A DNA stretch of 64,000 bases from Iphione sp. A-MEVVRFRX5 (Eukaryota): contig OZ320313.1 in NCBI GenBank assembly GCA_976226885.1, forward strand, positions 116,002,001-116,066,000, read 5' to 3'. Positions 9,501 to 21,268 of the stretch are shown piece after piece. The notes below the pieces were generated by a model. The model was not told where the DNA came from and did no database searches. It saw only the letters and a program-made list of their open reading frames with translations. The translations under genes and the position numbers were made by a program. Numbering within the stretch: the first letter of the stretch is position 1; the number at the start of each line of letters is the position of its first letter.

Positions 9501-12500
9501 CGCTTGGCAGTGTTGTGACACGTGAATAGTTGTTAGTTAGACTTGGTCCATGTTTGTCCTCATGGGCTACTCGTAGTGCATTTTGGGAAACGAGATAATC
9601 ATTTGATGGGGCAAGCCTCTCACCTATGAGCGGCACAGCGTCCGAGGTTGGGGGCATTGTTTCTGCTACCAGCAGGAGAAACACAGTGAGAGACAGGAGG
9701 ATAGTGACGCCTGGAAGAGAGAGAAGACCAGACAACTGAGTCGGGCCGGACGGCGCCAGACCTCACGTAGTTAGAAAAGTCCCGCCGCCAGACGGAGCAC
9801 AGCTTGCTCGGATATCCCAGTCTCAAATTTGTGTTGGTCTTTCAGAGAAAGAGCGTCTGTTTGTATAATAATGTACGTTATACTGCTAAAAGATATTCAT
9901 TATCGGTTTCCACAGAAAACTCTCTTAAATGGAAAGGGTACGGTGCAACAAGAGAATGGCACTATTTTTATTTTTCCTGGAGTTTAAGCACAGACGTCGT
10001 TCCAGAGGAAAGACTCCCCTCCGAGATTCCCTCAGCAAGTTGTGAGCCGTTGGTCAAAAAACGTATTGTACAAAAGTAATGCAAGTTGCACACAGATCAT
10101 GTTTACACTGCAGACAACCACAGGGCCCGAATACTCTAACCGATTTGACGCAGCTCACTGGAGGAGCGCCAGTCTGCACTAGCGCCCTCTGGTGAGTAAC
10201 CGTGTCATCTCGGACGACAATACGAGTACTGCTCCCTGGTGCGATCTAGATGTACTAATCAGCGTTAGGCTGGTTGACACATTTGACACACGGTGCCAGC
10301 CAAAGGTGATACACTTGAATCACAACAGTGTGCAGTCGTTGTATCTACAGAAGTATGTTACTTGCTACAACAAGTAGTATATATATACACAGCTAGAAAC
10401 AATCAACTACTGAATGCCTATAGCCAGAACAACAAATTCTAATCTACAGTAATATACATTTAGATATACAGATTTCAATTCAAGCGTAATGCGAGTTAAA
10501 TATTACGAGTAAGGATTTTAATACTGAATTAGAAGACATAGTACTATCCAGTTAGTTATGTCGGGAAACTATTCGCTACACTTCAGGCTACTACAATGGT
10601 CAATTTCATAAAACTGTCACAAAGACTAACATTTGCGCACGTTGTTAGTTATTTACATAGTTATCTCCTACACGCTCACCAAGGTATATGTTTTCAACCT
10701 GATCTATTTTGTTATTTGCGTGCAACTTCGTTTAGTCGGTTATCCAGTTATTTACAATCGAAACATGGCGCACAAAACTAAACATTCCTTCGGGCTGTGT
10801 TTTGTCTAAATCGTGGAAACATTATCCCTTTCTGATGGACCTTTTCATTAATTACACATAATTACACGTTATACCCTGCAGATTCTTCGTCAATTAGGAG
10901 AACAAAAGGAGCGTATATAACACCAATTATTGCTAGCGTTATCAATTGTGATGATAATAAAAGGCATATCGCATATTTCGATAGAAGTATTGCACGGTAG
11001 GACATTTTCTCGTGCATCATGTAAGTCAAGAATACATAATCCAAAACTCGATACAGTTGACAAAGGTACAGGATATATACGAAGAAATATCTATATTTGA
11101 AGTGCATATAAAAGGTTCGTGAACAATAAATCAAATTAGTATCAACAGGATGTGTGTCATCATTTAAAAGTGCAATACATGAACATACTATATTTTGTGA
11201 GAACAGACCAAGTTACTCTGATTATGTATAAAGTTATATTTTAAATGGAGTAATTCTAATTGTGCATTCTTTGTTTCATCTCTCACAACAATAGGGGAGA
11301 TGACTTTGTTTAAACACCTGTGGCCTAATATGCATGTGTATCTACCCCTGGGCTAGGGCAATTCGAGCTCATTATTATACTGGCAAATTCTATGTACCAT
11401 AATAATTTTATAACAGATATGTTGTGTACAGGTCTGTTTGAAAAAAAATATGCTGGTAACATTCCTTTATAACTTCCTGTATGTCGAACACAACCTTTCA
11501 TTAAAATGTTTTATATGAAAATGTACTTCTTTGAGACGGGCGCAAAAGGCGTTTGTAGGAGTCTATAAAGATTTGTCTACGTATTTAGCAAAACAACTGA
11601 ATTTTTCGGTTTTAATTAAGTGGTGACAGATTGTCAGTCATACTACTGCAGTATAGTGGGTGTTTGCCTTTTCCAGATCGGGTCTCCTCAAATTAGAATG
11701 GGCCACTACTGGGACTAAGGCTGGGCTTCAATGTGTCTGATTTGCAAAAAAAAAAAAAAAAAAAGGGGGGGGGGGCCCTGTGTAAGGGGAAAACATGGTA
11801 TCATAAGCAGGAACTAAGCTTTTCCATGTGTCTGGTATGTGTATCCATGTCCATATGTCTGAGGTCCAAAACAAGCAATGTCCATGAATTTTCCCGTAGA
11901 AACAGATCCAGACAGAAAAACTGATGAGTAGGGTACGAACATGATGGTTTACATCAGGGCCCAGGCTATTAGATTATGAAAAAGTACCTAATTTGCATAT
12001 CATTTGCATAAAGCTGCATGCGTATTAAGAAATTTAAGGAGAAAGTGTCACTATTTGCACAGTAATTGTTCTGTTTCAAGATACATGTATTTACGGAAAA
12101 AAAGTACGCTCTTTATATACACAGTTATTGTTCATTTTCAAGAATTTAAGGGTGAAGCCACACAATTGAGTTAATACTCAGTTTACCTAACGCACATACA
12201 CACATGGATATACATGGAAAAGGCCAATCAGTGATTGTCTGAAACTGTCTGGGAAATCAAACAAAACAGGTCCTGTATATATAGAAAAATACCAGATACA
12301 AGGAAACCCAGCCTTAAATAGAAAAAGACGTATTGTGAACTGCCTGACAATACTCCAAAGGCAGAGAGTAACGCAGAATTGTACAGGTTTATAGACGAAC
12401 GATTTAAAACAAAAGGTGCTTATGTTTCAATCATAATTTAAGTGCAGAAAAATTCTTTAAAATCATTTTACATGATAGCAAGTGTAGTATAATTTATATC

Positions 12501-15500
12501 TAGGTATTTTGAGGTCGATTACACAGCAAGATTCATGAGAAGTCTGTACACTTGTCTCCCTGGTTTAATTGTTGATAATGTTCTAGTAATAGTTGATGTA
12601 TTAGGTTTCTTTGTATACTTTATATACTTTGTAAACGATGTTTAAAGTAAAAAACTGACCTCCAGTGATCGGAAGTACGTATGGGAAGCATTCTATTAAA
12701 AGGTTATATTGTCTTCCCTCTCTAACCAATTAGGTTCTCGGATTATTATAGTTATTCCTTTCGTGCCCATATTGTTCCATATTGATTATTGTTAAATCGA
12801 GCAGCTTACCTGTATTGACAATATTGCTATACACCCCACTATACGCAGTGAACTCAAGGATGAAACTGACATTATATTAAAGGTATCACCTAGCCACGAC
12901 TACAAACTATTAGTCAGTCCAGTGTGCTGATGTAAATGTATCCAAAATGAAAACTTTGACCTAAGAGGTGAGTTGTTTACTTTTAAATGTTATTTTATAT
13001 TTTCTACTAAATTCCAAGAAAATATATCTCAAAACTTGTCCCAGATTTTCAATAAAATCAATATATAATATGGTGCAACATGAAATATTTGTCGGTAACA
13101 GAGGAGACAAATTTTAGAAGAAATTACATTTGCAATCATTCCCTTTTCGGAAAAGAACCGAACGTCGAAAGTCAATCTTTCTGAGGAAAGCCCTCTAAAA
13201 TGGTCTAGAATGGCCGATTGCAATAAGCAAAAATGTACCTGAATATGTAACAGATGACAGAGACTCAGCAAGAGCAAGCAATATAAAACATACGGCCAGC
13301 ACAAAACAATATGATTCAACGAGTCCGGCCACAATGAATCATGCACTGAACACGGGCCATACACCTCACGTCGTATGGCGTTGCGTCACGCGAGGGTGAC
13401 GGAATGGTCAGAACTGCTCTTACCTAAGGAGATTTTCTCCCCAGCGTCGGGAGGAAGGGTGAATGTCAGCAGTGCCATTGATGATATCAAAACACAGGGG
13501 ATTATCAAGTTAAATCCGTAATAAAGCGTTCTCCGTCGTATGTGGATTGTAAAGGTAATATCTATATATTGTTCTGGACAGCAATCGTATTGTACTACAT
13601 TGCGCTTTGCGGGTACACCTAGAAACAAAGAAGATATGAGACATTGTCAAGCAACGGGTGTTTGATTTTTGTATGAAGAAAGGAAAGAGTTAGAGAACCT
13701 ACCACATGCTATTTTCTCTCCGGCATCCGGGGGCATGGCGAATACCAGTATCGACAGGAGGGAAAGCATGAGGCAGGGAACAACCAAGTTAAAAACGTAG
13801 TAGAGCTTTCTGCGTCTGATTTTGATGGTAAATGTAATATCGATATACTGCTCTGGGCAACAGTCGTACTGTACAACATTCCTCGAGGCAGGGACATCTG
13901 CAAAGACACGACACCACGTTACTCCCACGCACTATCCGGTGCACATGCCCAATGCTGCCTTTGCTCGCATGTCACCTTCTACGTCAGTGATTACGTCATG
14001 CCTAGGTCAACGCTGACGTTAGTAGACACATCCGACGCGTTGGACTCCCACGACAACAGCGAGAATGAAAGTGGCGTTAGCGTTGTATATGTGGCGCTTG
14101 CAAAACAATGGGTTGGGGTGGGGGATCGGGGATCGGGGGAACAAATCAAAAAAGTATTAAACCCGTACTCAAAATAATCCTAAAGCAACACCTAATGTAT
14201 GATGCCTACTAGCTGCCATCTACGGGGAATTGGTCATCCAGAACGCAAATGTTAGTTTTTCAGTTTAAGCTTTCGTAATGTTCAAAAATTTTGGGAGGTT
14301 TAGGGCAAACTTAGCTTGGCGTGTTTGCTGTCAGGGATGGTATTTAAAACTGTGTCCAAAACAGAGCATCACAACATAGGCATGCGTTCAATTTAGATTC
14401 TTTATCTCATGTTATCGTTAATAAGTTGAAGAAAAACATCCTCTAAACTAGATTACACTTCGAGAAATATTAGATGAAACAAGATCTTTTTGAGTGGACA
14501 GGTTTTAGTTCTTAGTACTAGCAAGGTGAATTTAACGACTTGTTTAAGGTTCTGAAGGACAAGTGCATTTGTGAAAATGTAGAAACACTCAAAACATGAC
14601 TGCCCTGGGAATGTTCCAGAAACGAATCTGTTGTGCCCATTTATTTAACTTCTGACGTTTTATGAAATGCCAATCAAAAACAAGAGCGACTGATCTTATT
14701 GTTTAATCGAATCAAAAACTGTCTTACCATCAGAAAGCTCTATGACCATTGAAATGAAAAGAAATTATAGTTGACTGTCTTAGGAGAATCTATAGTAATA
14801 GGAAACACATCGGAAGGTCATCTTATAGAATGCAGTTTATAAGAGTTAATCAACGTCAAAGAAGGCATGATAATGAAGGTATGTCAGCATAAACTTACAT
14901 GCCTCATGATGTCAATTCAATACAAAAGTTAGTGAAATCATATTATTTCTATGGCACACAGTCTACATATCCTTAAAAGGAATAGTAAATCATTAAAGTC
15001 TATATTTTATCTTTCAAAACGAAAATAAAGCTGGCTTAAGCTGAGAATATGAGCAGCGCATGGAAAGAGTGCTTAGCATATGTGCATTCTCAGTGAGTCG
15101 CTCTGCGCAGCATCGCTTGCAAGATTATTCTCAAAACTGATGGACTAACCTGCATGTAGCCATGCCTCCAACACTACGGAATTCATTGTTAGACGGTGGC
15201 TATCTATCTACATGAATGTTTACAATCATTTGATAAAATAATACTAAAATAAAGACTTATACTTTGGGCCGTTGCTTCATTTTCACAAATAGTTTGTCGA
15301 ATATATATTATATCTATATATTCTTTTTATTATCATGTATAGTTCAGGTAACATATTACATTGGTAAGCAGCTTTGTGCTATCATCGTCAATTAGGGATT
15401 TATTCGGGGAAAAATTTTAAATATTACAAATATCACCCGGCTCCCGTTGCCTGTTATCATCAGGTCACCGGCTTTCTTACCGACTAGTTCCCATTCTCCG

Positions 15501-18500
15501 TTGGGTATGAAACTGGATATGTCGCCTCCTTCTCCTTGCAGTTGGAGGTCTATAGCAGACCCATCGTAAGTCCAGGAACCAAATTTCATGGTGCATTTCT
15601 GGTCGTCAAATGGGAACCACGTAATATCTATCTTACATGTACTAAGGAAGAGTCCCGGTGGCACCCAAAGACAATCGCCGTTTGACGAGATAACGACGTT
15701 CGTCGGGAATGTACTGTCGATGTCTTCGTCAGCACTATTAAGATAAAGCGTAAGGATAACAGCAATGAATCTGTTTTGCCATTTAACAAGTTGATTATAT
15801 AGGGACACAGAAACGATCGGTCAAACCGAAGAAAAATCCTTTCCAATCATGGTCTCCTTCTCTCGGTAGCAAAACTTCGCTTTACATAAATTCTTTACCT
15901 ATCCAAGAAAGGTGACCGCGCTAGGTCGGAGTTGCATTTCAGATCAAATCAGATTTTCAAAAAATGATTTCGAGCAATTCGGGAAATTCTATCCAACAGT
16001 AGTGTGGTGAAAGATGAAATTTGTCTTTATCTATGTTCACTTGCCCTTTCGTATTGATTCATTTGATTTGATTGATTTGATTTTTATTGAGAAACAGCCA
16101 TTCTTACCCAGAATGGTTTGCATTAGTATCTCAATACTACTGACTACTACTTTATCGAATTGTATGGCTACGTGTTAGTACATGTTGTTCAACACAGATT
16201 TTAAACAATTTCTTTTCCACTCCAATCCATCTACAGGGCAACTTGTTCCATTGCGTTAACCCGTCATACTTGATACTTTTTGCTCAGTCAGTCTGCTGGC
16301 GAATTCTTTTCAGCAATATATTTAACCGGATCGTTACCTGTTATACATAAGAATATCAGGTTTCCAGAGATATTTCGGTGGAACCCGTATGCTCTTCAAG
16401 CCGCCATACTCGGTTTCATTCCATCGGAGACTGTAGTCATTCCACACCTGCAACATTTAGACCAGTGGTAGATGCTTTATACCCGAATGGAATTCGGCAT
16501 CACTTCAAGTCGGTTCCAAATTTAGTTATCTCTTCATGATAGCATATATTAACATCTACAATTTTCCTCCGCGTCCATATATATGTATACTGATTTATTC
16601 AATATTTCAATTGCACCTATATCTGGGAGACCTGAGGTAAGAAGTGTGCAAATGTGTCTTTGTTGTCGTGTGTGTGATAAAAAAAACTTCAGAGCAATTA
16701 CAGGAATTCGCAGGAGATTACCAGAATTATATTAATAATGGAGCGATTAGATGGGGAAAGACAGTTAGCAGAGACACGAAAGGAAATTAGAACAGAATGA
16801 CCGATTCGAGTTCTCTCACCACTTACATGTATATTGTACAATGAGTAAGTGCGACAAAACATTGTTTAGTTTTATTTTAATCTACTCTATTGTGAAGTGT
16901 GAGCGAGAAACGAGCAGGAACATCACAAACAATGGAAATGGAACCTCACTCGATGTTTCTCGTCTGAAGTCACGTATTCCAGGGTGTTTCATTGGATTTT
17001 GTAAGGAAGGAGTACCTGGACCATAGGTCTTTAAATACACTGGTACAACAATTTTCTGTCCACTTATATATTCGTCCCCTCTTGTGGCTGTGTTTTGCTC
17101 ACGTCCCTCGGTGGGTTCTCTACTCCCCTTTAAAAAATGCTACATTGGTTTTGATACCAATAATAGCTCATGACTTTTACAAGGAACGAAGTTCGCAGGT
17201 TAAGGTCACTGGGCTCGAGTTTTCCTAGGATCACACGACGTGTAATCATAAAGACTACCAAAGACTGCCTTGCAAATGCAATCGAATGGGGGAATCAATC
17301 CATGTGGACAGCTGTAGTTACATGTAAGCGTTCACATGAACTACGTCGTGCTAGAAGGCGGTCCTTTCTTGGCTGCGGCCACCTGCACGTGAACTAGCAG
17401 CACTCACCTGGCAGCACCCAAGAGCGTTCCCTTTGCCAAGTGCTTCCCACTCCCCATCCCTTATCAATCAAAACGTATATTAACGTTCCAGTGCCTCGGC
17501 TGACCAAACGCACATCTTATAGAGAGGGCGTACTAAGAAGCAGCCCAAGGACTTGTTAACCGTCGGGGCTGGTTAATCTTCCTGCCAGCTTAAAACTAGA
17601 GGGGTGAGTAGCCGGTGGTATTTTCAACCACTACCAATCACGGCTCTCCAACTGAGAAACCTTACCAACCTACGCGCATGCTACCTACAGAAAAAAAGTG
17701 GCAGTATTCTATCAGTGTGGAAGAGGAAAACAACAGGTGAATCATCTATCATCGCGGAAGTCTGTTCGGTCCCTGATGCATATCTATCCACGCTATGGAA
17801 CCAAGAATTATGCAGAAATGTTTACCAGGCACTAAACGGACGGCGCTCAGGTAACGTGCGCCATGACGGAGTTTGGTGTGTGTCTCTATATATAAACATG
17901 TATTTATATATCCAGGGAATGCCATGCTTGCTTCCGTTACGATTGAAATTTATGGCGAAAATAATCTCACTCTTGGTACTGGCACCAGGGGTGTTTTCAC
18001 ATTTTTTAACACAGTAATATTTTAGATGTAACCGAGCCTGGTGATACAGATAACATGGATAAAGGCTCATTTCAATTTTCATTCTGAACGGAATTAACAT
18101 CGTTCTTTCCTACCAAAGATCTTATTTGCTAACTTAACACTACAAAGAAGGAAGTAATAACAAAAGTGTACTACTTGATAAAAATGGTGTACTCTTCTCC
18201 CGTGGAATGTAAGATATTTGGAAGAATATATATACGAATATGTTTATACAAGTATATATATTCGGTATACATGTGCGAAATCCAAAATTATCAAAATATA
18301 TACTTAATGTATAAAGCAATGCATATATATATAAACCTAGAACATTTGAGACATCCTTAGAATAGTTACTCTTATTTATTATCTTAAAGGTGATGAAGTA
18401 TAACAAGATCATACTCAATTTGATTTCACAGATGCGACAATTCTCAAATGGTTCTTTTTATGCTTGTTTTAAAACTTAGGCTAACACAGAGTGTGGTACG

Positions 18501-21268
18501 AGGACAAGTAAAGATGCCCTAAGATCATAATGGTGAGGTAGTATCTTATGGCATAGAATTTCTATAGGCAAGGTAAGGTGCTGCCTAGCTGAATGTGAAG
18601 GCAGGGAGTGAAGGACTTTGACTCTCACGACCAGGGGCACCGACAGGAGCAAAATGCACATTACGGCATTTGACGTGACATGCTTATCATTATATTGTGT
18701 TTGTTCGTATATTGTATATATACCATATGACTATATAGAGAGAGATAATGTACAAGATTTAAGAAAAAGAGATGCAGTAGAGGAAGGGGGTTGACGTTCA
18801 TTTAGGGTAGGTGAGGGGTTCTTTTCATGCATGATTCATTTAGATTCTGGAGTTAGGCTGGGCATGCAATTTAGGCTTTCCTTAAATGAATCAGCTCAGG
18901 GTGGCACTATAAAAAGCTGATGGGTTCTCGTCAACCGTTTTTTTTTTCGATCAAATTTTGAGAATCCGAAACTGTCCATGAAAAAGGTAGTAATTGTATT
19001 AAACATTGTCTCCAAAGCCAAAAAAAATCTACTGTGTTCATACGTTCCCACGTCGATCCCTACCGGATTGACCAAAGTCAGGATTGGTATTAACATTTGA
19101 GCAAACAATAATAAATAAACGGAAATGAAATTAATCAGCACAGAAAAGTCGAAACTGGTAACAATTTCACAATTTTCACTGATTAGTCTAGGAAACGCGT
19201 TAGGAGAGATTTTGACACCACCCTGAGAGTGAGGAAAGCATGTGAAGAATTCAGGTCCCTTCACTAGAAATCAAAATACACGGAGGATAAAATAAGTTGA
19301 TATACACTTATTTAAATCAATCGAGGATAAAATAAGTTGAAAGTTAATTTATATTATTTTATGGGTTAGCTAATAGTTATTTACTACGGGGGAGGGGGAT
19401 TATTTAAATTAATCGTTTATTACCTCTGAGGCCCAAGGCCAGAGGTGTTAATCTTTCATTTTAATTTTGAATGGTTTAAATGCTCCCTTTTTCTTGTAAG
19501 TTAAATAATTATTGCCGATAGTTGTCTTGCATAAGGCACACTTAAGTTAAAACGTGAAATTTCCTAAGTGACAAGATTATAGGTTTACCAGCAATTTTGC
19601 CTTTCCCATGTCAACCTAACATCTTACTAGCGTGCGCTGTCAACTTGTTTTATCCTCATTTGGCTTTATCCTTAAATGTTTCTGACTTACCAAATTTAAC
19701 CAGATATTTGTGTTTATGATTTGATTCTTTTCATCCTGTGAGGAAGAGAGAAAGAGTGTGTTATTACAGAAACGCTACCGAGCCGCGTGAGGGTTAAGAG
19801 TCACGCGACCTTTCACGGGTCAAGGTCAGACCGCCAGTTAACTTACCATATTCAACCATATATTAGATGTTAATATTTGGTTCTTTTCATCCTGGGAAAA
19901 ATAAAAAACAGAGATTAGTCAGCTGTAACAGCGGTAAGATGGACACTTGGCACCTCGAATTCGGTGTCTCTAGGGGGCAGCACAGCAGTGAGATTATTAT
20001 TGGCTGCTGCCAGCAAGCGATGTAGGATTACCAACACTATGCCGTCAGCAAACAAGAATGGAACAATTAGACTAAAACACGCTAGTTACACAGCACACTG
20101 TGGTGTAAGATCCATCTCAGGGCATGAAATCACGATACAGACTTGAAATATTCAAAAAGGCTTGCTAGAAAAAGATTACCGTCGTAAAGTTTACAAGAAA
20201 AAAGTCGTGTGGCATTGCTACCTTGGTGTAGATTGCCGGTTTCAGTTACGAATATCCCGAATCTAGCAGTTGATAACGAGACTGAACACTGTATTCTAGG
20301 AACATACGTCCCCACAGAAAAGTGGAAAGGCACTTTGACTATCAAAATCATATTTCCATTGTGTAAGATCGTGTTTTGCTGTCTTTCCAATCGCCACCGT
20401 GGGAAAGTAAACCACGTCACCAAGTGATATGCAAAGAGGGTGGTTTAAGTATTCAGCAGGGTTCGACATTCAAAATGTACTCCAAAACCCGAAAACCAAA
20501 CTTCAGTCGTGTCCAGTTAGTGATAATCAGCGAACTAAAAACATTAATCTAATTGGAATAGTACACACAATAATGTGAAACACAGCAAGGGACAAGACGC
20601 TGTGTCGAATCACGCAGTTCACGCCGGTGCACAGGAATCGAAATGGTTCGATCAGAAAGAAAAAAACAAGAGGAATAACAACACTCCAGCGAGACAATAA
20701 TACAAATGTATATGACAGTGCACATAAACATGGCTTCGTTATTGAAACATACAAATAACAGACATGCATTATAGGAATCATTGACCAGTGACGCTTGATA
20801 TTTGATTAATGTATGCTACTAGTTGTGAGCTAATCGTCACTCTGCCATTTACGGATCCAAATGCTACTAATTCGATACATTACTAACCGCAAGGAGCACA
20901 TCGCACTGACAGCATTAAATTACCGTGCTGTTTTCTCATGTTCTTCTAAACCATACGTGTGTTCTTATGCATTGCTAGATGGCCAAATCCATTAACTACC
21001 GTAACGCAAACTGGTAGACGTTTTGTCTCATTCTTTGAATGGAGTCATTTATGCGGATCATGCCACTAGCTTGGTTCGGTATATTTAAAACAAGCAATGA
21101 TCATGGAGGTAGCTAGCAACTACATTACCACGTCGATGATTTGCTGAAGAACCAGCCCAAAGTGGACAGTCAGGGCCGCGCTTTCGTTGGCCACCGGCCG
21201 CTCCAGCGTGTCGTACCTGGAGAACAGGTCAGTCAGGAGCCTCTTCTCGTACGGCCCCTGATGGGTAC
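6073..21268 (-). CDS. CHRNA7-like: Nicotinic acetylcholine receptor alpha subunit, alpha7-like (pentameric ligand-gated cation channel); multi-exon, 5' coding exon not located
   Basis: The spliced exons give loop A (WKPDILMYN), the Cys-loop ([15 protein letters not shown]), loop B (WTYDG), loop C vicinal cysteines (YDCCPEQY), GEK before M2, and M1-M4. Exon sizes 140/45/110/254/195/87/110/465 match the CHRNA7 pattern. All junctions are GT-AG with compatible phases. Confidence 0.96.
6824..6933 (-). CDS. CHRNA7-like: alpha7-like nAChR exon 9 (110 nt, M3): (G)[36 protein letters not shown]
   Basis: Acceptor gttctAG|GT, donor TGG|GTaagt. Translated by hand. Confidence 0.95.
9624..9710 (-). CDS. 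CHRNA7-like: alpha7-like nAChR exon 8 (87 nt, M2): (G)[28 protein letters not shown]
   Basis: Acceptor tctcttccAG|GC, donor ATAG|GTgaga. Confidence 0.96.
10180..10196 (-). promoter_or_regulatory. CTCF-like motif (TCACCAGAGGGCGCTA)
   Basis: Close match by eye to the CTCF core consensus. Confidence 0.4.
13424..13618 (-). CDS. CHRNA7-like: alpha7-like nAChR exon 7b (195 nt): (G)[64 protein letters not shown]
   Basis: Acceptor tttgtttctAG|GT, donor TTAG|GTaaga. Phase 1/1, with a canonical alpha7-like M1. Confidence 0.95.
13703..13897 (-). CDS. CHRNA7-like: alpha7-like nAChR exon 7a (195 nt): (D)[64 protein letters not shown]
   Basis: Acceptor gtctttgcAG|AT, donor TGTG|GTaggt. Phase 1/1, open reading frame. 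Confidence 0.92.
15481..15734 (-). CDS. CHRNA7-like: alpha7-like nAChR fused exon 5/6 (254 nt): (S)ADEDIDSTF...[15 protein letters not shown]...WTYDG...NGEWELV
   Basis: Acceptor cttaatAG|TGCT, donor GTCG|GTaaga. Lies inside ORF 15392-15808 and contains the Cys-loop and loop B. Confidence 0.96.
16055..16140 (-). mobile_element. Short retroposon 3' tail relic
   Basis: The minus strand has CAATAAAAA followed by an (ATCAA)n tandem tail, as seen at LINE ends. Confidence 0.35.
16338..16447 (-). CDS. CHRNA7-like: alpha7-like nAChR exon 4 (110 nt): [36 protein letters not shown](S)
   Basis: Acceptor gttgcAG|GTG, donor AACAG|GTaacg. Contains the loop A motif. Confidence 0.95.
19691..19735 (-). CDS. 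CHRNA7-like: alpha7-like nAChR exon 3b (45 nt): [15 protein letters not shown]
   Basis: Acceptor ctcttcctcacAG|GAT, donor TTG|GTaagt. Same length and phase as exon 3a. Confidence 0.93.
19847..19891 (-). CDS. CHRNA7-like: alpha7-like nAChR exon 3a (45 nt): [15 protein letters not shown]
   Basis: Acceptor tttttcccAG|GAT, donor ATG|GTaagt. A branch-point-like ctgactaat lies at 19914-19922. Encodes the loop D Trp. Confidence 0.93.
21129..21268 (-). CDS. CHRNA7-like: alpha7-like nAChR exon 2 (140 nt): (G)[46 protein letters not shown]
   Basis: Acceptor tatttccAG|GT, donor GTG|GTaatg. Phase 1 in, phase 0 out. Not in the ORF track; translated by hand. Confidence 0.95.

What the first reader, a model, noticed from the sequence alone, without database searches (positions are those of the whole stretch)
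13424..13800. The exon 7 switch changes the transmembrane and pore module but leaves the agonist loop unchanged
Seen: differences concentrate after loop C. Pre-M1 is RRRK vs RRRT, M1 is [22 protein letters not shown] vs [22 protein letters not shown], and the M2 start is GEKIAC vs GEKISL. Established M2 numbering (E-1', K0', I1', S2', L3') makes this S2'->A and L3'->C. Position 2' lines the narrow cytoplasmic end of the pore and is a known conductance and channel-blocker site in Cys-loop receptors. E-1' is kept, so both forms should remain cation-selective. Inference: splicing tunes permeation, desensitisation or allosteric modulation at constant ligand recognition.
Basis: partly seen in the sequence, partly recalled or inferred. 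Interest (0 to 1): 0.78.

Follow-up and report, generated by a model that had tools for sequence, protein, structure and literature searches.

The report
Alternative M1 exons in worm nicotinic receptor
An annelid-type alpha7-like acetylcholine receptor gene carries two interchangeable copies of the exon for loop C, the first membrane helix and the inner mouth of the pore; the pair is hundreds of millions of years old and shared with ribbon worms and flatworms, but what the rarer copy changes in the channel is still untested.

Summary
On the minus strand lie two 195-nt exons, 7a (13897-13703) and 7b (13618-13424). They have the same phase, AG/GT borders and an 84-nt spacer.

Both copies are under selection. 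Synonymous sites between them are saturated (pS 0.80) while pN is 0.17. The same 7a-then-7b tandem occurs in three other assemblies, a ~91% relative, Capitella, Owenia, Macrostomum and Lineus. All a-type copies form one group in the tree (97/86). RefSeq models of Lineus swap the two forms one for one. So this is an ancient spiralian pair of mutually exclusive exons. It sits one exon upstream of the insect alpha6 exon 8 switch.

- The unchanged loop C is peculiar to this genome (2/26 differences against 6-11/26 elsewhere).
- The 2' residue of 7a is not conserved (T, S, A or D). The diagnostic changes are pre-M1 T207K, M1, and 3' (never Leu).
- M2 from 4' to 20' is a shared exon.

The only RNA evidence near this species is an exon 6->7b->8 contig; no 7a splice was seen. 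The scan had also flagged this pair, the 3a/3b pair and another duplicated receptor exon in this genome.

The parts
13703..13897 (-). Exon 7a (195 nt). Encodes (D)[64 protein letters not shown](G): beta9, loop C, beta10, pre-M1, M1, the M1-M2 loop and M2 -4' to 3'. This is the diverged 'a-type' copy.
   Evidence: AG/GT borders and frame. Best PDB match is human alpha7, 70 bits. Pfam Neur_chan_memb 25.8 bits. The a-type group in the tree has 97/86 support. The polypyrimidine tract is weaker (11/20) and the donor is GTAGGT.
13619..13702 (-). 84-nt spacer intron between 7a and 7b.
   Evidence: No stable fold (z = +1.08). It diverges fast in the ~91% relative (at least 24 differences and 4 indels) while the exons do not. 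The spacer is 69, 300, 64 and about 786 nt in L001, L002, L006 and Lineus.
13424..13618 (-). Exon 7b (195 nt). Encodes (G)[64 protein letters not shown](G). This is the canonical alpha7-like 'b-type' copy and the likely default exon.
   Evidence: Best PDB match is human alpha7, 86 bits. The amino-acid sequence is 100% identical in L001 and L002 despite pS 0.72-0.85. A spliced contig exon 6->7b->exon 8 was found in run X7. The polypyrimidine tract is strong, 17/20.
15481..15737 (-). Upstream constitutive exon (alpha7 exons 5 and 6 fused; contains the Cys-loop [15 protein letters not shown]). Its donor at 15481 feeds either 7a or 7b. The start coordinate is approximate.
   Evidence: Pfam Neur_chan_LBD 90.8 bits. 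Joint 15479/13616 in X7.
9624..9710 (-). Shared exon 8 (87 nt). Encodes (G)[28 protein letters not shown](G): M2 4' to 20' and the M2-M3 linker. It is the homologue of the insect alpha6 alternative exon 8, but is single here.
   Evidence: Joint 13423/9709 in X7. Insect exon 8 = TM2.

Best explanation
7a and 7b are an ancient pair of mutually exclusive alternative exons in an annelid-type alpha7-like nicotinic receptor subunit gene. Exon 6 is spliced to one of the two, and that one to exon 8.

7b is the default form. It has strong splice signals and an amino-acid sequence that is almost frozen across spiralian phyla and close to vertebrate alpha7.

7a is a weaker, presumably regulated exon. It replaces pre-M1 (T207K), 13 of 24 M1 residues, and the 2' and 3' residues of M2. 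It keeps the Cys-Cys loop C core, the conserved M1 Pro-Cys, the PPDAGEK loop and the E-1' ring.

Shown: the anatomy, selection on both copies, conservation of the pair and its order, and one-for-one swapping in RefSeq models of a nemertean.

Inferred: the 7a isoform is still an ACh-gated cation channel subunit. Its differences lie mainly in properties set by M1 and the M1/M2 subunit interface, namely gating and desensitisation kinetics, lipid or allosteric-modulator sensitivity, and possibly assembly partners. At most a modest effect on conductance or block through 2' is expected.
For: Anatomy: two 195-nt exons in the same phase, with AG/GT borders.

Selection within the window: pS = 0.80 (saturated) against pN = 0.17. 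Of the 27 identical residues in the first 30, 17 use different codons.

Selection between taxa: 7a has pN/pS of about 0.2 at pS 0.55-0.85. 7b has 0 amino-acid changes between the window, L001 and L002. All 12 exon differences listed against a ~91% relative are synonymous (4 in 7a, 8 in 7b), while the spacer changed at 24 or more positions.

Conserved tandem order a then b: L001, L002/L003, L006; organism C genomic contigs; Capitella, Owenia and Macrostomum proteins; Lineus locus L013.

Single origin: all 11 a-type copies lie on one side of a 97/86 branch.

Mutual exclusion: Lineus isoforms X1, X2 and X4 carry the b-type and X3 and X6 the a-type, and all are 480 aa. A Macrostomum model joins an a-type exon directly to exon 8.

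7b as default: a spliced 6->7b->8 contig in X7 at depth 37, and a stronger polypyrimidine tract and donor in all four taxa.

Function-relevant sites: M1 S222 and A225 affect PAM potentiation of alpha7, and A225 is S in 7a. M1 of the complementary subunit lines the intersubunit PNU/cholesterol site.
Against: No read or contig shows 7a spliced to exon 6 or exon 8 in this species or its near relatives. In X7, 7a appears only in a low-depth contig that continues into the upstream intron.

The RefSeq isoforms of Lineus are computed models. I could not inspect their RNA support.

No functional property was measured.

Changed M1 positions show no helical-face bias (resultant 0.13), so no particular interface is singled out.

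A bivalve alpha7-like gene (Pinctada, L014) lacks the pair, so the switch is dispensable in some lineages.
Confidence: 0.75

Rival explanations
1. The main effect of the switch is on the pore. The 2' and 3' substitutions at the cytoplasmic constriction change conductance, Ca2+ permeability or open-channel block, and the M1 changes are secondary.
For: 2' is pore-lining and sits next to the E-1' ring (numbering confirmed). 3' is never Leu in any a-type copy and always Leu in b-type copies.
Against: 2' in a-type copies varies (T6, S3, A1, D1) and is often the Ser or Thr that is normal for cationic nAChRs. 3' is not a canonical pore-facing position (established M2 periodicity). 16 of the 18 differences lie outside M2. 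M2 from 4' to 20' is shared.
Confidence: 0.2
2. The switch mainly sets assembly or trafficking. The a-type M1 lets the subunit join other subunits or use other chaperones, as an obligate heteromer partner, instead of tuning the properties of a homomer.
For: M1 and the start of M2 contribute to subunit interfaces. T2' is shared with the heteromeric nAChR subunits (alpha1, alpha4, beta2); this is recalled from the literature and was not tested here. Some genomes carry a-type-only genes (L004 with 7a followed directly by exon 8, L005, Macrostomum P0165), as expected if the a-form became a separate subunit.
Against: There are no assembly data. The extracellular interfaces that dominate nAChR assembly are shared between isoforms in this species.
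Confidence: 0.25
3. In this species 7a is an unused relic (pseudo-exon), and only 7b is ever spliced in.
For: Only the 6->7b->8 junctions were seen. 7a has the weaker acceptor tract and donor.
Against: The open frame and AG/GT borders are intact here and in every relative. pN/pS is about 0.2 over saturated synonymous divergence. All differences to the ~91% relative that were listed for 7a are synonymous, while the adjoining spacer decays. Contigs drop rare variants, so absence from one run says little.
Confidence: 0.07
4. Both exons are included in series, as in the deposited Capitella, Owenia and Macrostomum gene models.
For: 195 nt keeps the frame, and several deposited models contain both copies.
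Against: A second loop C plus M1 would add one membrane pass and invert the topology of M2-M4. The X7 contig skips 7a. All five Lineus isoforms have the same length with one copy each. The double models also string 3a and 3b together, which is typical of ab initio prediction.
Confidence: 0.02

Closest known systems
Insect nAChR alpha6 (Dalpha6 and orthologues): mutually exclusive exons 3a/3b and 8a/8b/8c (PMC1919356, PMC2064938)
   Same: Same gene family (alpha7/alpha6-like). Tandem duplicated exons are swapped one for one. The 45-nt exon 3a/3b pair is also present in this gene (19891-19847 and 19735-19691). One copy is nearly invariant and preferred while the others are less conserved and rarer; in insects this is the 8b > 8a > 8c hierarchy.
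   Different: The insect TM switch is exon 8, the body of TM2 and the homologue of alpha7 exon 8. That exon is single here (9710-9624). The switched exon here is the preceding one (loop C, pre-M1, M1, M2 up to 3'). The papers I searched describe no such switch for insects.
Vertebrate CHRNA7 exon 7
   Same: Identical exon borders, phase and length (195 nt). 7b aligns end to end with human alpha7 residues 178-241.
   Different: No alternative exon 7 of vertebrate CHRNA7 turned up in my paper searches; I did not examine a vertebrate gene. Here there are two copies.
RefSeq isoforms X1-X6 of the alpha7-like gene of the nemertean Lineus longissimus (XP_064652926, XP_064652936, XP_064652944, XP_064652952, XP_064652968)
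   Same: Orthologous a-type and b-type exon 7 copies in the same order, swapped one for one. There is an alternative exon 3 pair as well.
   Different: The Lineus 7a also changes loop C (YACCPEPY vs YECCPEEY) and reads GEKVSFG. Its spacer is about 786 nt rather than 84 nt. Lineus additionally has an alternative exon 4 pair that is absent here.
Tandem exon pair in arthropod alpha7-like genes (termites, locust, planthopper, barnacle, prawn; RefSeq models)
   Same: The same exon is duplicated in tandem (a GEKLSLG copy followed by a GEKLTLG copy).
   Different: In the exon tree both arthropod copies fall inside the arthropod clade on the b side (99/97). It is therefore an independent duplication and not orthologous to 7a.

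Membership tests
Cys-loop (pentameric) ligand-gated ion channel, nicotinic alpha subunit, alpha7-like | Neur_chan_LBD and Neur_chan_memb domains | tested here: met
   Exon 5/6 piece: PF02931, 90.8 bits. Exon 10: PF02932, 52 bits. 7b: PF02932, 31.4 bits. 7a: 25.8 bits, just under the 28.1 cutoff as a 64-aa fragment.
Cys-loop (pentameric) ligand-gated ion channel, nicotinic alpha subunit, alpha7-like | Cys-loop with 13 residues between the cysteines, and the vicinal Cys-Cys of loop C (the alpha-subunit hallmark) | tested here: met
   [15 protein letters not shown] in exon 5/6. YDCC in both 7a and 7b.
Cys-loop (pentameric) ligand-gated ion channel, nicotinic alpha subunit, alpha7-like | Closest solved relative is alpha7, with the same exon 7 and exon 8 borders | tested here: met
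   Best PDB hits for both exons are human alpha7 (E 7e-19 and 5e-24). The exons are 195 nt and 87 nt.
Cation-selective nAChR pore | GEK motif with Glu at -1' and no Pro-Ala-Arg type insertion before M2 | tested here: met
   PPDAGEK in 7a and 7b. G-E-K is kept in all 11 a-type and 13 b-type copies compared. One unplaced fragment outside that set (P0017) reads GEN.
Mutually exclusive tandem exon pair | Adjacent homologous exons of equal length and phase, each with its own splice sites | tested here: met
   195 nt each, phase 1/1, AG/GT borders, 68% nucleotide and 72% amino-acid identity.
Mutually exclusive tandem exon pair | Both copies kept by purifying selection across species | tested here: met
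Mutually exclusive tandem exon pair | Transcripts carry one copy or the other, never both or neither | tested here: inconclusive
   For near relatives only the 6->7b->8 form was seen. One-for-one swapping is seen in RefSeq models of Lineus, but their read support could not be examined. Degenerate junction scans of metagenome contigs were blank for both forms.
Insect alpha6 exon 8 switch | The alternative exon encodes the body of TM2 (alpha7 exon 8 homologue) | tested here: not met
   That exon is single in the window (9710-9624). The duplicated exon is the one upstream. The system works like the insect one but is not the same switch.

The most novel reading that the evidence does not exclude
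The exon 7a/7b switch predates the split of annelids, nemerteans and flatworms. Together with the 3a/3b pair that insects and ticks also have, it would mean that the early protostome alpha7/alpha6 gene was already a modular isoform generator. On this reading the a-type M1/3' module defines a physiologically distinct, so far uncharacterised class of alpha7-like channel (different desensitisation, lipid or modulator sensitivity, or partners). In some lineages it was later released as a separate a-type-only gene.
Probability: 0.35. Interest if true: 0.7.

Novelty: new variant of a known kind. Interest (0 to 1): 0.5.

Why it matters
Alpha7-type receptors are a reference system for gating, desensitisation and transmembrane allosteric modulation. 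Here evolution has kept two natural versions of pre-M1, M1 and the inner pore mouth on an otherwise identical subunit, apparently since before these phyla diverged (no dating was done). In this species loop C is also identical between the two versions.

That makes a clean natural chimera experiment. Comparing the two isoforms, and M1-only against 2'/3'-only swaps, would show what this module contributes.

The work also corrects deposited gene models (Capitella, Owenia, Macrostomum and several arthropods) that string both copies in series. It further shows that the insect alpha6 strategy of exon switching extends to another exon in another superphylum.

Tried and rejected
1. Direct repeat search at DNA level found nothing. 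The copies are too diverged (68%), and only protein-level comparison shows them.
2. The search for RNA runs listed no run on record as RNA. The best holders were contigs of relatives. Read laying gave one spliced 7b contig and no 7a junction.
3. Degenerate DNA patterns for the spliced 7a->8 junction, and for 7b->8 as a control, were both blank in metagenome contigs. The blank for 7a is therefore uninformative.
4. ESM Atlas look-alikes of the exon 5/6 peptide gave only generic LBD clusters and no useful taxonomy.
5. Steric exclusion by the short spacer as the general mechanism is rejected. The spacer is 64-84 nt in three genomes but 300 nt in L002 and about 786 nt in Lineus, where the models are still mutually exclusive. 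In the window the candidate branch points (my reading of the spacer sequence printed; no tool located them) lie 56-66 nt from the 7a donor.
6. A local RNA structure masking the 7a donor or the 7b acceptor is not supported. The fold is no better than shuffles (z = +1.08).
7. A helical-face bias of the M1 substitutions was not found.
8. Recent gene conversion as the reason for the identical loop C is rejected, because synonymous sites in that half are saturated (pS 0.86).
9. Exact look-ups of Lineus X1 and X3 found no gene on record. X2 gave the locus.
10. No structure prediction was run. The spliced window protein has no reference to hand in, and a monomer model would not address function.
Full report
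**What is there**

The window carries, on its minus strand, an alpha7-like nicotinic acetylcholine receptor subunit gene. By comparison with the Capitella and Lineus proteins and with a related contig, the exons lie at:
- about 21269-21129 (exon 2)
- 19891-19847 and 19735-19691 (two copies of the 45-nt exon 3)
- about 16447-16340 (exon 4)
- about 15737-15481 (alpha7 exons 5 and 6 fused, with the Cys-loop)
- 13897-13703 (7a)
- 13618-13424 (7b)
- 9710-9624 (exon 8, M2 4' to 20')
- about 6940-6806 (M3)
- 6537-6073 (cytoplasmic loop, M4, stop)

Pfam confirms the ligand-binding and transmembrane domains on the pieces.

**Checking the observation**

Exons 7a and 7b are each 195 nt, begin after AG and end before GT, and share phase 1 at both ends. 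They are separated by 84 nt.

phmmer against all PDB chains gives human alpha7 as the best match for both: 86 bits for 7b and 70 bits for 7a. Their last five residues align with alpha7 E237-K238-I239-S240-L241.

The two peptides differ at 18 of 64 codons: 2 of the first 26 and 16 of the last 38 (Fisher p = 0.004).

- The split first codon gives Asp in 7a and Gly in 7b.
- K181S and H202K flank loop C.
- Because 195 is divisible by three, neither double inclusion nor double skipping would break the frame. Nonsense-mediated decay therefore cannot police the choice.

**Are both copies real exons?**

Within the window, synonymous sites between the copies are saturated (pS 0.80) while pN is 0.17. 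Of the 27 identical residues among the first 30, 17 are written with different codons. The identity of loop C is therefore maintained at the protein level and is not the trace of a recent gene conversion.

A word search with the 7a peptide found open-reading-frame fragments of two clear types in public assemblies: a-type ([17 protein letters not shown]...GEK[IV]TCG) and b-type (...GEKISLG).

Fetching their contigs showed the same a-then-b tandem in L001 (spacer 69 nt), L002/L003 (300 nt) and L006 (64 nt). All have AG/GT borders, and the 7a donor is always GTAGGT.

Between these taxa, 7b has no amino-acid change (window, L001, L002) although pS is 0.72-0.85. 7a has pN of about 0.14-0.20, giving pN/pS of about 0.2.

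Genomic contigs of a ~91% identical relative (runs X3 and X5) cover both exons and the spacer contiguously. The 12 exon differences that the tool listed are all synonymous (4 in 7a, 8 in 7b). The 84-nt spacer carries at least 24 substitutions and 4 indels. Forty further differences were not listed.

A pseudo-exon would not behave like this.

**How old and how widespread**

A profile of seven a-type peptides was searched against 1.84 billion representative proteins. The top hits were proteins with two matched stretches. The named ones are gene models that contain both copies in series:
- Macrostomum lignano alpha7 (flatworm)
- Capitella teleta CAPTEDRAFT_221893 (annelid; it contains both 3a+3b and 7a+7b)
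- Owenia fusiformis (annelid)
- separately, several crustacean and hemimetabolous insect models

In a maximum-likelihood tree of 37 exon-7 peptides, all 11 a-type copies sit on one side of a branch with 97/86 support. These come from the window, L001, L002, L004, L005, L006, Capitella, Owenia, Lineus and two Macrostomum genes. The window's 7a falls in a 98/94 set with Capitella. The arthropod pairs form their own clade on the b side.

The tree has only 64 columns, so the fine branching is unreliable. The a/b split is, however, also carried by fixed residues.

The duplication therefore predates the divergence of annelids, nemerteans and flatworms. The arthropod pair is independent.

The pair is not universal. 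Several contigs carry only a b-type exon (L007-L012). A Pinctada alpha7-like gene has only a b-type exon and a single exon 3. L004 and L005 carry only an a-type exon, which in L004 is followed directly by exon 8.

**Is the choice mutually exclusive?**

The best evidence is indirect. RefSeq isoforms X1, X2, X3, X4 and X6 of the Lineus longissimus gene are all 480 residues long. They differ by one-for-one replacement of exon 3, exon 4 and exon 7: b-type in X1, X2 and X4, and a-type in X3 and X6. In the Lineus locus the a-type exon lies about 786 nt upstream of the b-type exon. A Macrostomum model joins an a-type exon directly to exon 8.

For the window's own lineage, the only spliced sequence I could obtain is a contig in run X7 (a relative) that joins exon 6 to 7b to exon 8 and skips 7a. 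It has GT..AG ends at 15479/13616 and 13423/9709. In that run 7a occurs only in a lower-depth contig that continues into the upstream intron and stops at the 7a donor. That contig reads GEKITCG, so the relative has Thr at 2'.

Contigs drop rare variants, so this shows that 7b is the major form. It does not show that 7a is silent.

Consistent with this, 7a has the weaker polypyrimidine tract (10-14 of 20 against 16-17) in all four genomes, and a GTAGGT donor everywhere. Greater conservation going with greater usage is the same pattern reported for insect alpha6 exons 8b > 8a > 8c (PMC1919356).

**What the switch changes**

I compared 11 a-type with 13 spiralian b-type copies. Three positions have disjoint residue sets:
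- alpha7 position 207 in pre-M1: K or M in a-type, against T, S or V in b-type
- position 219 in M1
- position 241 = 3': C, F, M or G in a-type, against L in b-type

Nearly diagnostic positions are 211 (V/I/L vs G), 221, 224 (L vs M) and 231 (M/I vs L).

The 2' residue is Ser in every b-type copy but T6, S3, A1, D1 among a-type copies. The window's Ala is a lineage-specific state and is not the point of the switch.

Loop C is not generally spared. The a and b copies of one gene differ at 6-11 of 26 extracellular positions in seven other genes, against 2 of 26 here. The ten-residue loop C core differs in all seven.

The GEK ring is kept in all 24 copies compared. M2 from 4' to 20' is in the shared exon 8.

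Of the alpha7 M1 residues known to affect PAM potentiation, S222 is kept and A225 is Ser in 7a. G211, whose Val mutant had no effect on PAMs, is Val in 7a. M1 of the complementary subunit helps to form the intersubunit PNU-120596/cholesterol site, and membrane-facing M1 residues contact cholesterol in a state-dependent way (PMC9618078).

The changed M1 positions show no helical-face bias.

**Most likely mechanism**

The gene makes two subunit isoforms that share all agonist-binding loops in this species, and share M2 4'-20', M3, the loop and M4. They differ in the beta10-M1 coupling region, in M1 and at the cytoplasmic mouth of M2. Both should be ACh-gated cation channels.

I infer that the a-type module mainly alters gating and desensitisation, lipid or modulator sensitivity, or the M1/M2 subunit interface (assembly). 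Any effect on permeation through 2'/3' would be small.

None of this has been measured.

**What enforces exclusion**

This is unresolved. Steric hindrance by a short spacer cannot be general, since spacers range from 64 to about 786 nt. In the window, the candidate branch points (my own reading of the spacer sequence printed; no tool located them) lie 56-66 nt from the 7a donor. The spacer has no stable fold.

Intron 6 holds two complementary 20-nt islands (14567-14586 and 15271-15290, 18 of 20 pairs). Both are retained in the relatives' contigs while the surrounding intron is not alignable. Their role is unknown.

**Comparison with what is known**

The closest described system is the insect alpha6 gene, with mutually exclusive exons 3a/3b and 8a/8b/8c. 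The exon 3 pair is shared with this gene. The insect TM switch, however, is the next exon downstream (the TM2 body), which is single here. The present switch works like the insect one but is not the same switch.

Full-text searches found no paper describing an alternative loop C/M1 exon in alpha7-like genes of annelids, nemerteans, flatworms or molluscs. The large survey of lophotrochozoan nAChRs does not mention alternative exons. The switch is, however, implicit in RefSeq isoforms of Lineus. I therefore rate it a new variant of a known kind, of moderate interest.

**Earlier notes of this scan**

Another window of this genome holds a duplicated loop-A exon in a different receptor gene, and its follow-up called the genome annelid-type. 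My exon tree agrees with that placement.

Noticed in passing
window 19847-19891 and 19691-19735 (minus strand): There are two tandem 45-nt copies of exon 3, encoding [15 protein letters not shown] and [15 protein letters not shown]. Each has AG/GTAAGT borders. This matches the insect alpha6 3a/3b pair, and Lineus, Tubulanus and Capitella have it too.
   Followed up: partly
window 14567-14586 and 15271-15290 (intron 6): Two 20-nt islands are complementary at 18 of 20 positions and lie 684 nt apart. Both are retained, with 1-2 changes, in genomic contigs of relatives in which the rest of the intron does not align. They may form an intronic RNA structure that influences splicing of exon 6 to 7a or 7b.
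   Followed up: partly
P0163 (Capitella CAPTEDRAFT_221893), P0174 (Owenia CAH1797308), P0022 (Macrostomum A0A1I8HTP0): These deposited gene models string both exon 7 copies in series; Capitella also strings both exon 3 copies. The result would be proteins with a duplicated loop C and M1. These are most likely annotation errors caused by the in-frame 195-nt length.
   Followed up: partly
P0172, P0173, P0175, P0177, P0199, P0170, P0205 (termites, cricket, locust, barnacle, prawn, planthopper): Arthropod alpha7-like genes have their own tandem pair of this exon: a GEKLSLG copy, then a GEKLTLG copy that resembles Drosophila alpha5/alpha6. Several RefSeq 'isoform X1' models include both. By the exon tree this duplication is independent of the spiralian one.
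   Followed up: partly
L013 68550-68666 and 68712-68819 (Lineus longissimus): The nemertean orthologue also has two alternative copies of exon 4 (loop A region), about 45 nt apart. Isoform X4 uses the upstream copy. The window has a single exon 4.
   Followed up: partly
L004 960-1154 and 1366-1449; L005 1150-1344: These contigs carry an a-type exon 7 (GEKITCG) and no b-type copy downstream. In L004 exon 8 follows after about 212 nt. Either the a-form became a separate gene or 7b was lost in that lineage.
   Followed up: no
L012 1647-1871 (P0014): This b-type exon has an internal 11-residue duplication in M1 (LIIPCAVISSV then LIIPCAIISSM).
   Followed up: no
window 14100-14140: A G-rich tract (gggttggggtgggggatcggggatcggggg) lies in intron 6, about 200 nt upstream of exon 7a on the transcript.
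   Followed up: no
LineusX3, Macrostomum_c1, Macrostomum2: The nemertean and flatworm a-type copies read GEKVSFG at -2' to 4'. From memory, V-S-F at 1'-3' is the 5-HT3A pattern. This is noted as a curiosity only.
   Followed up: no
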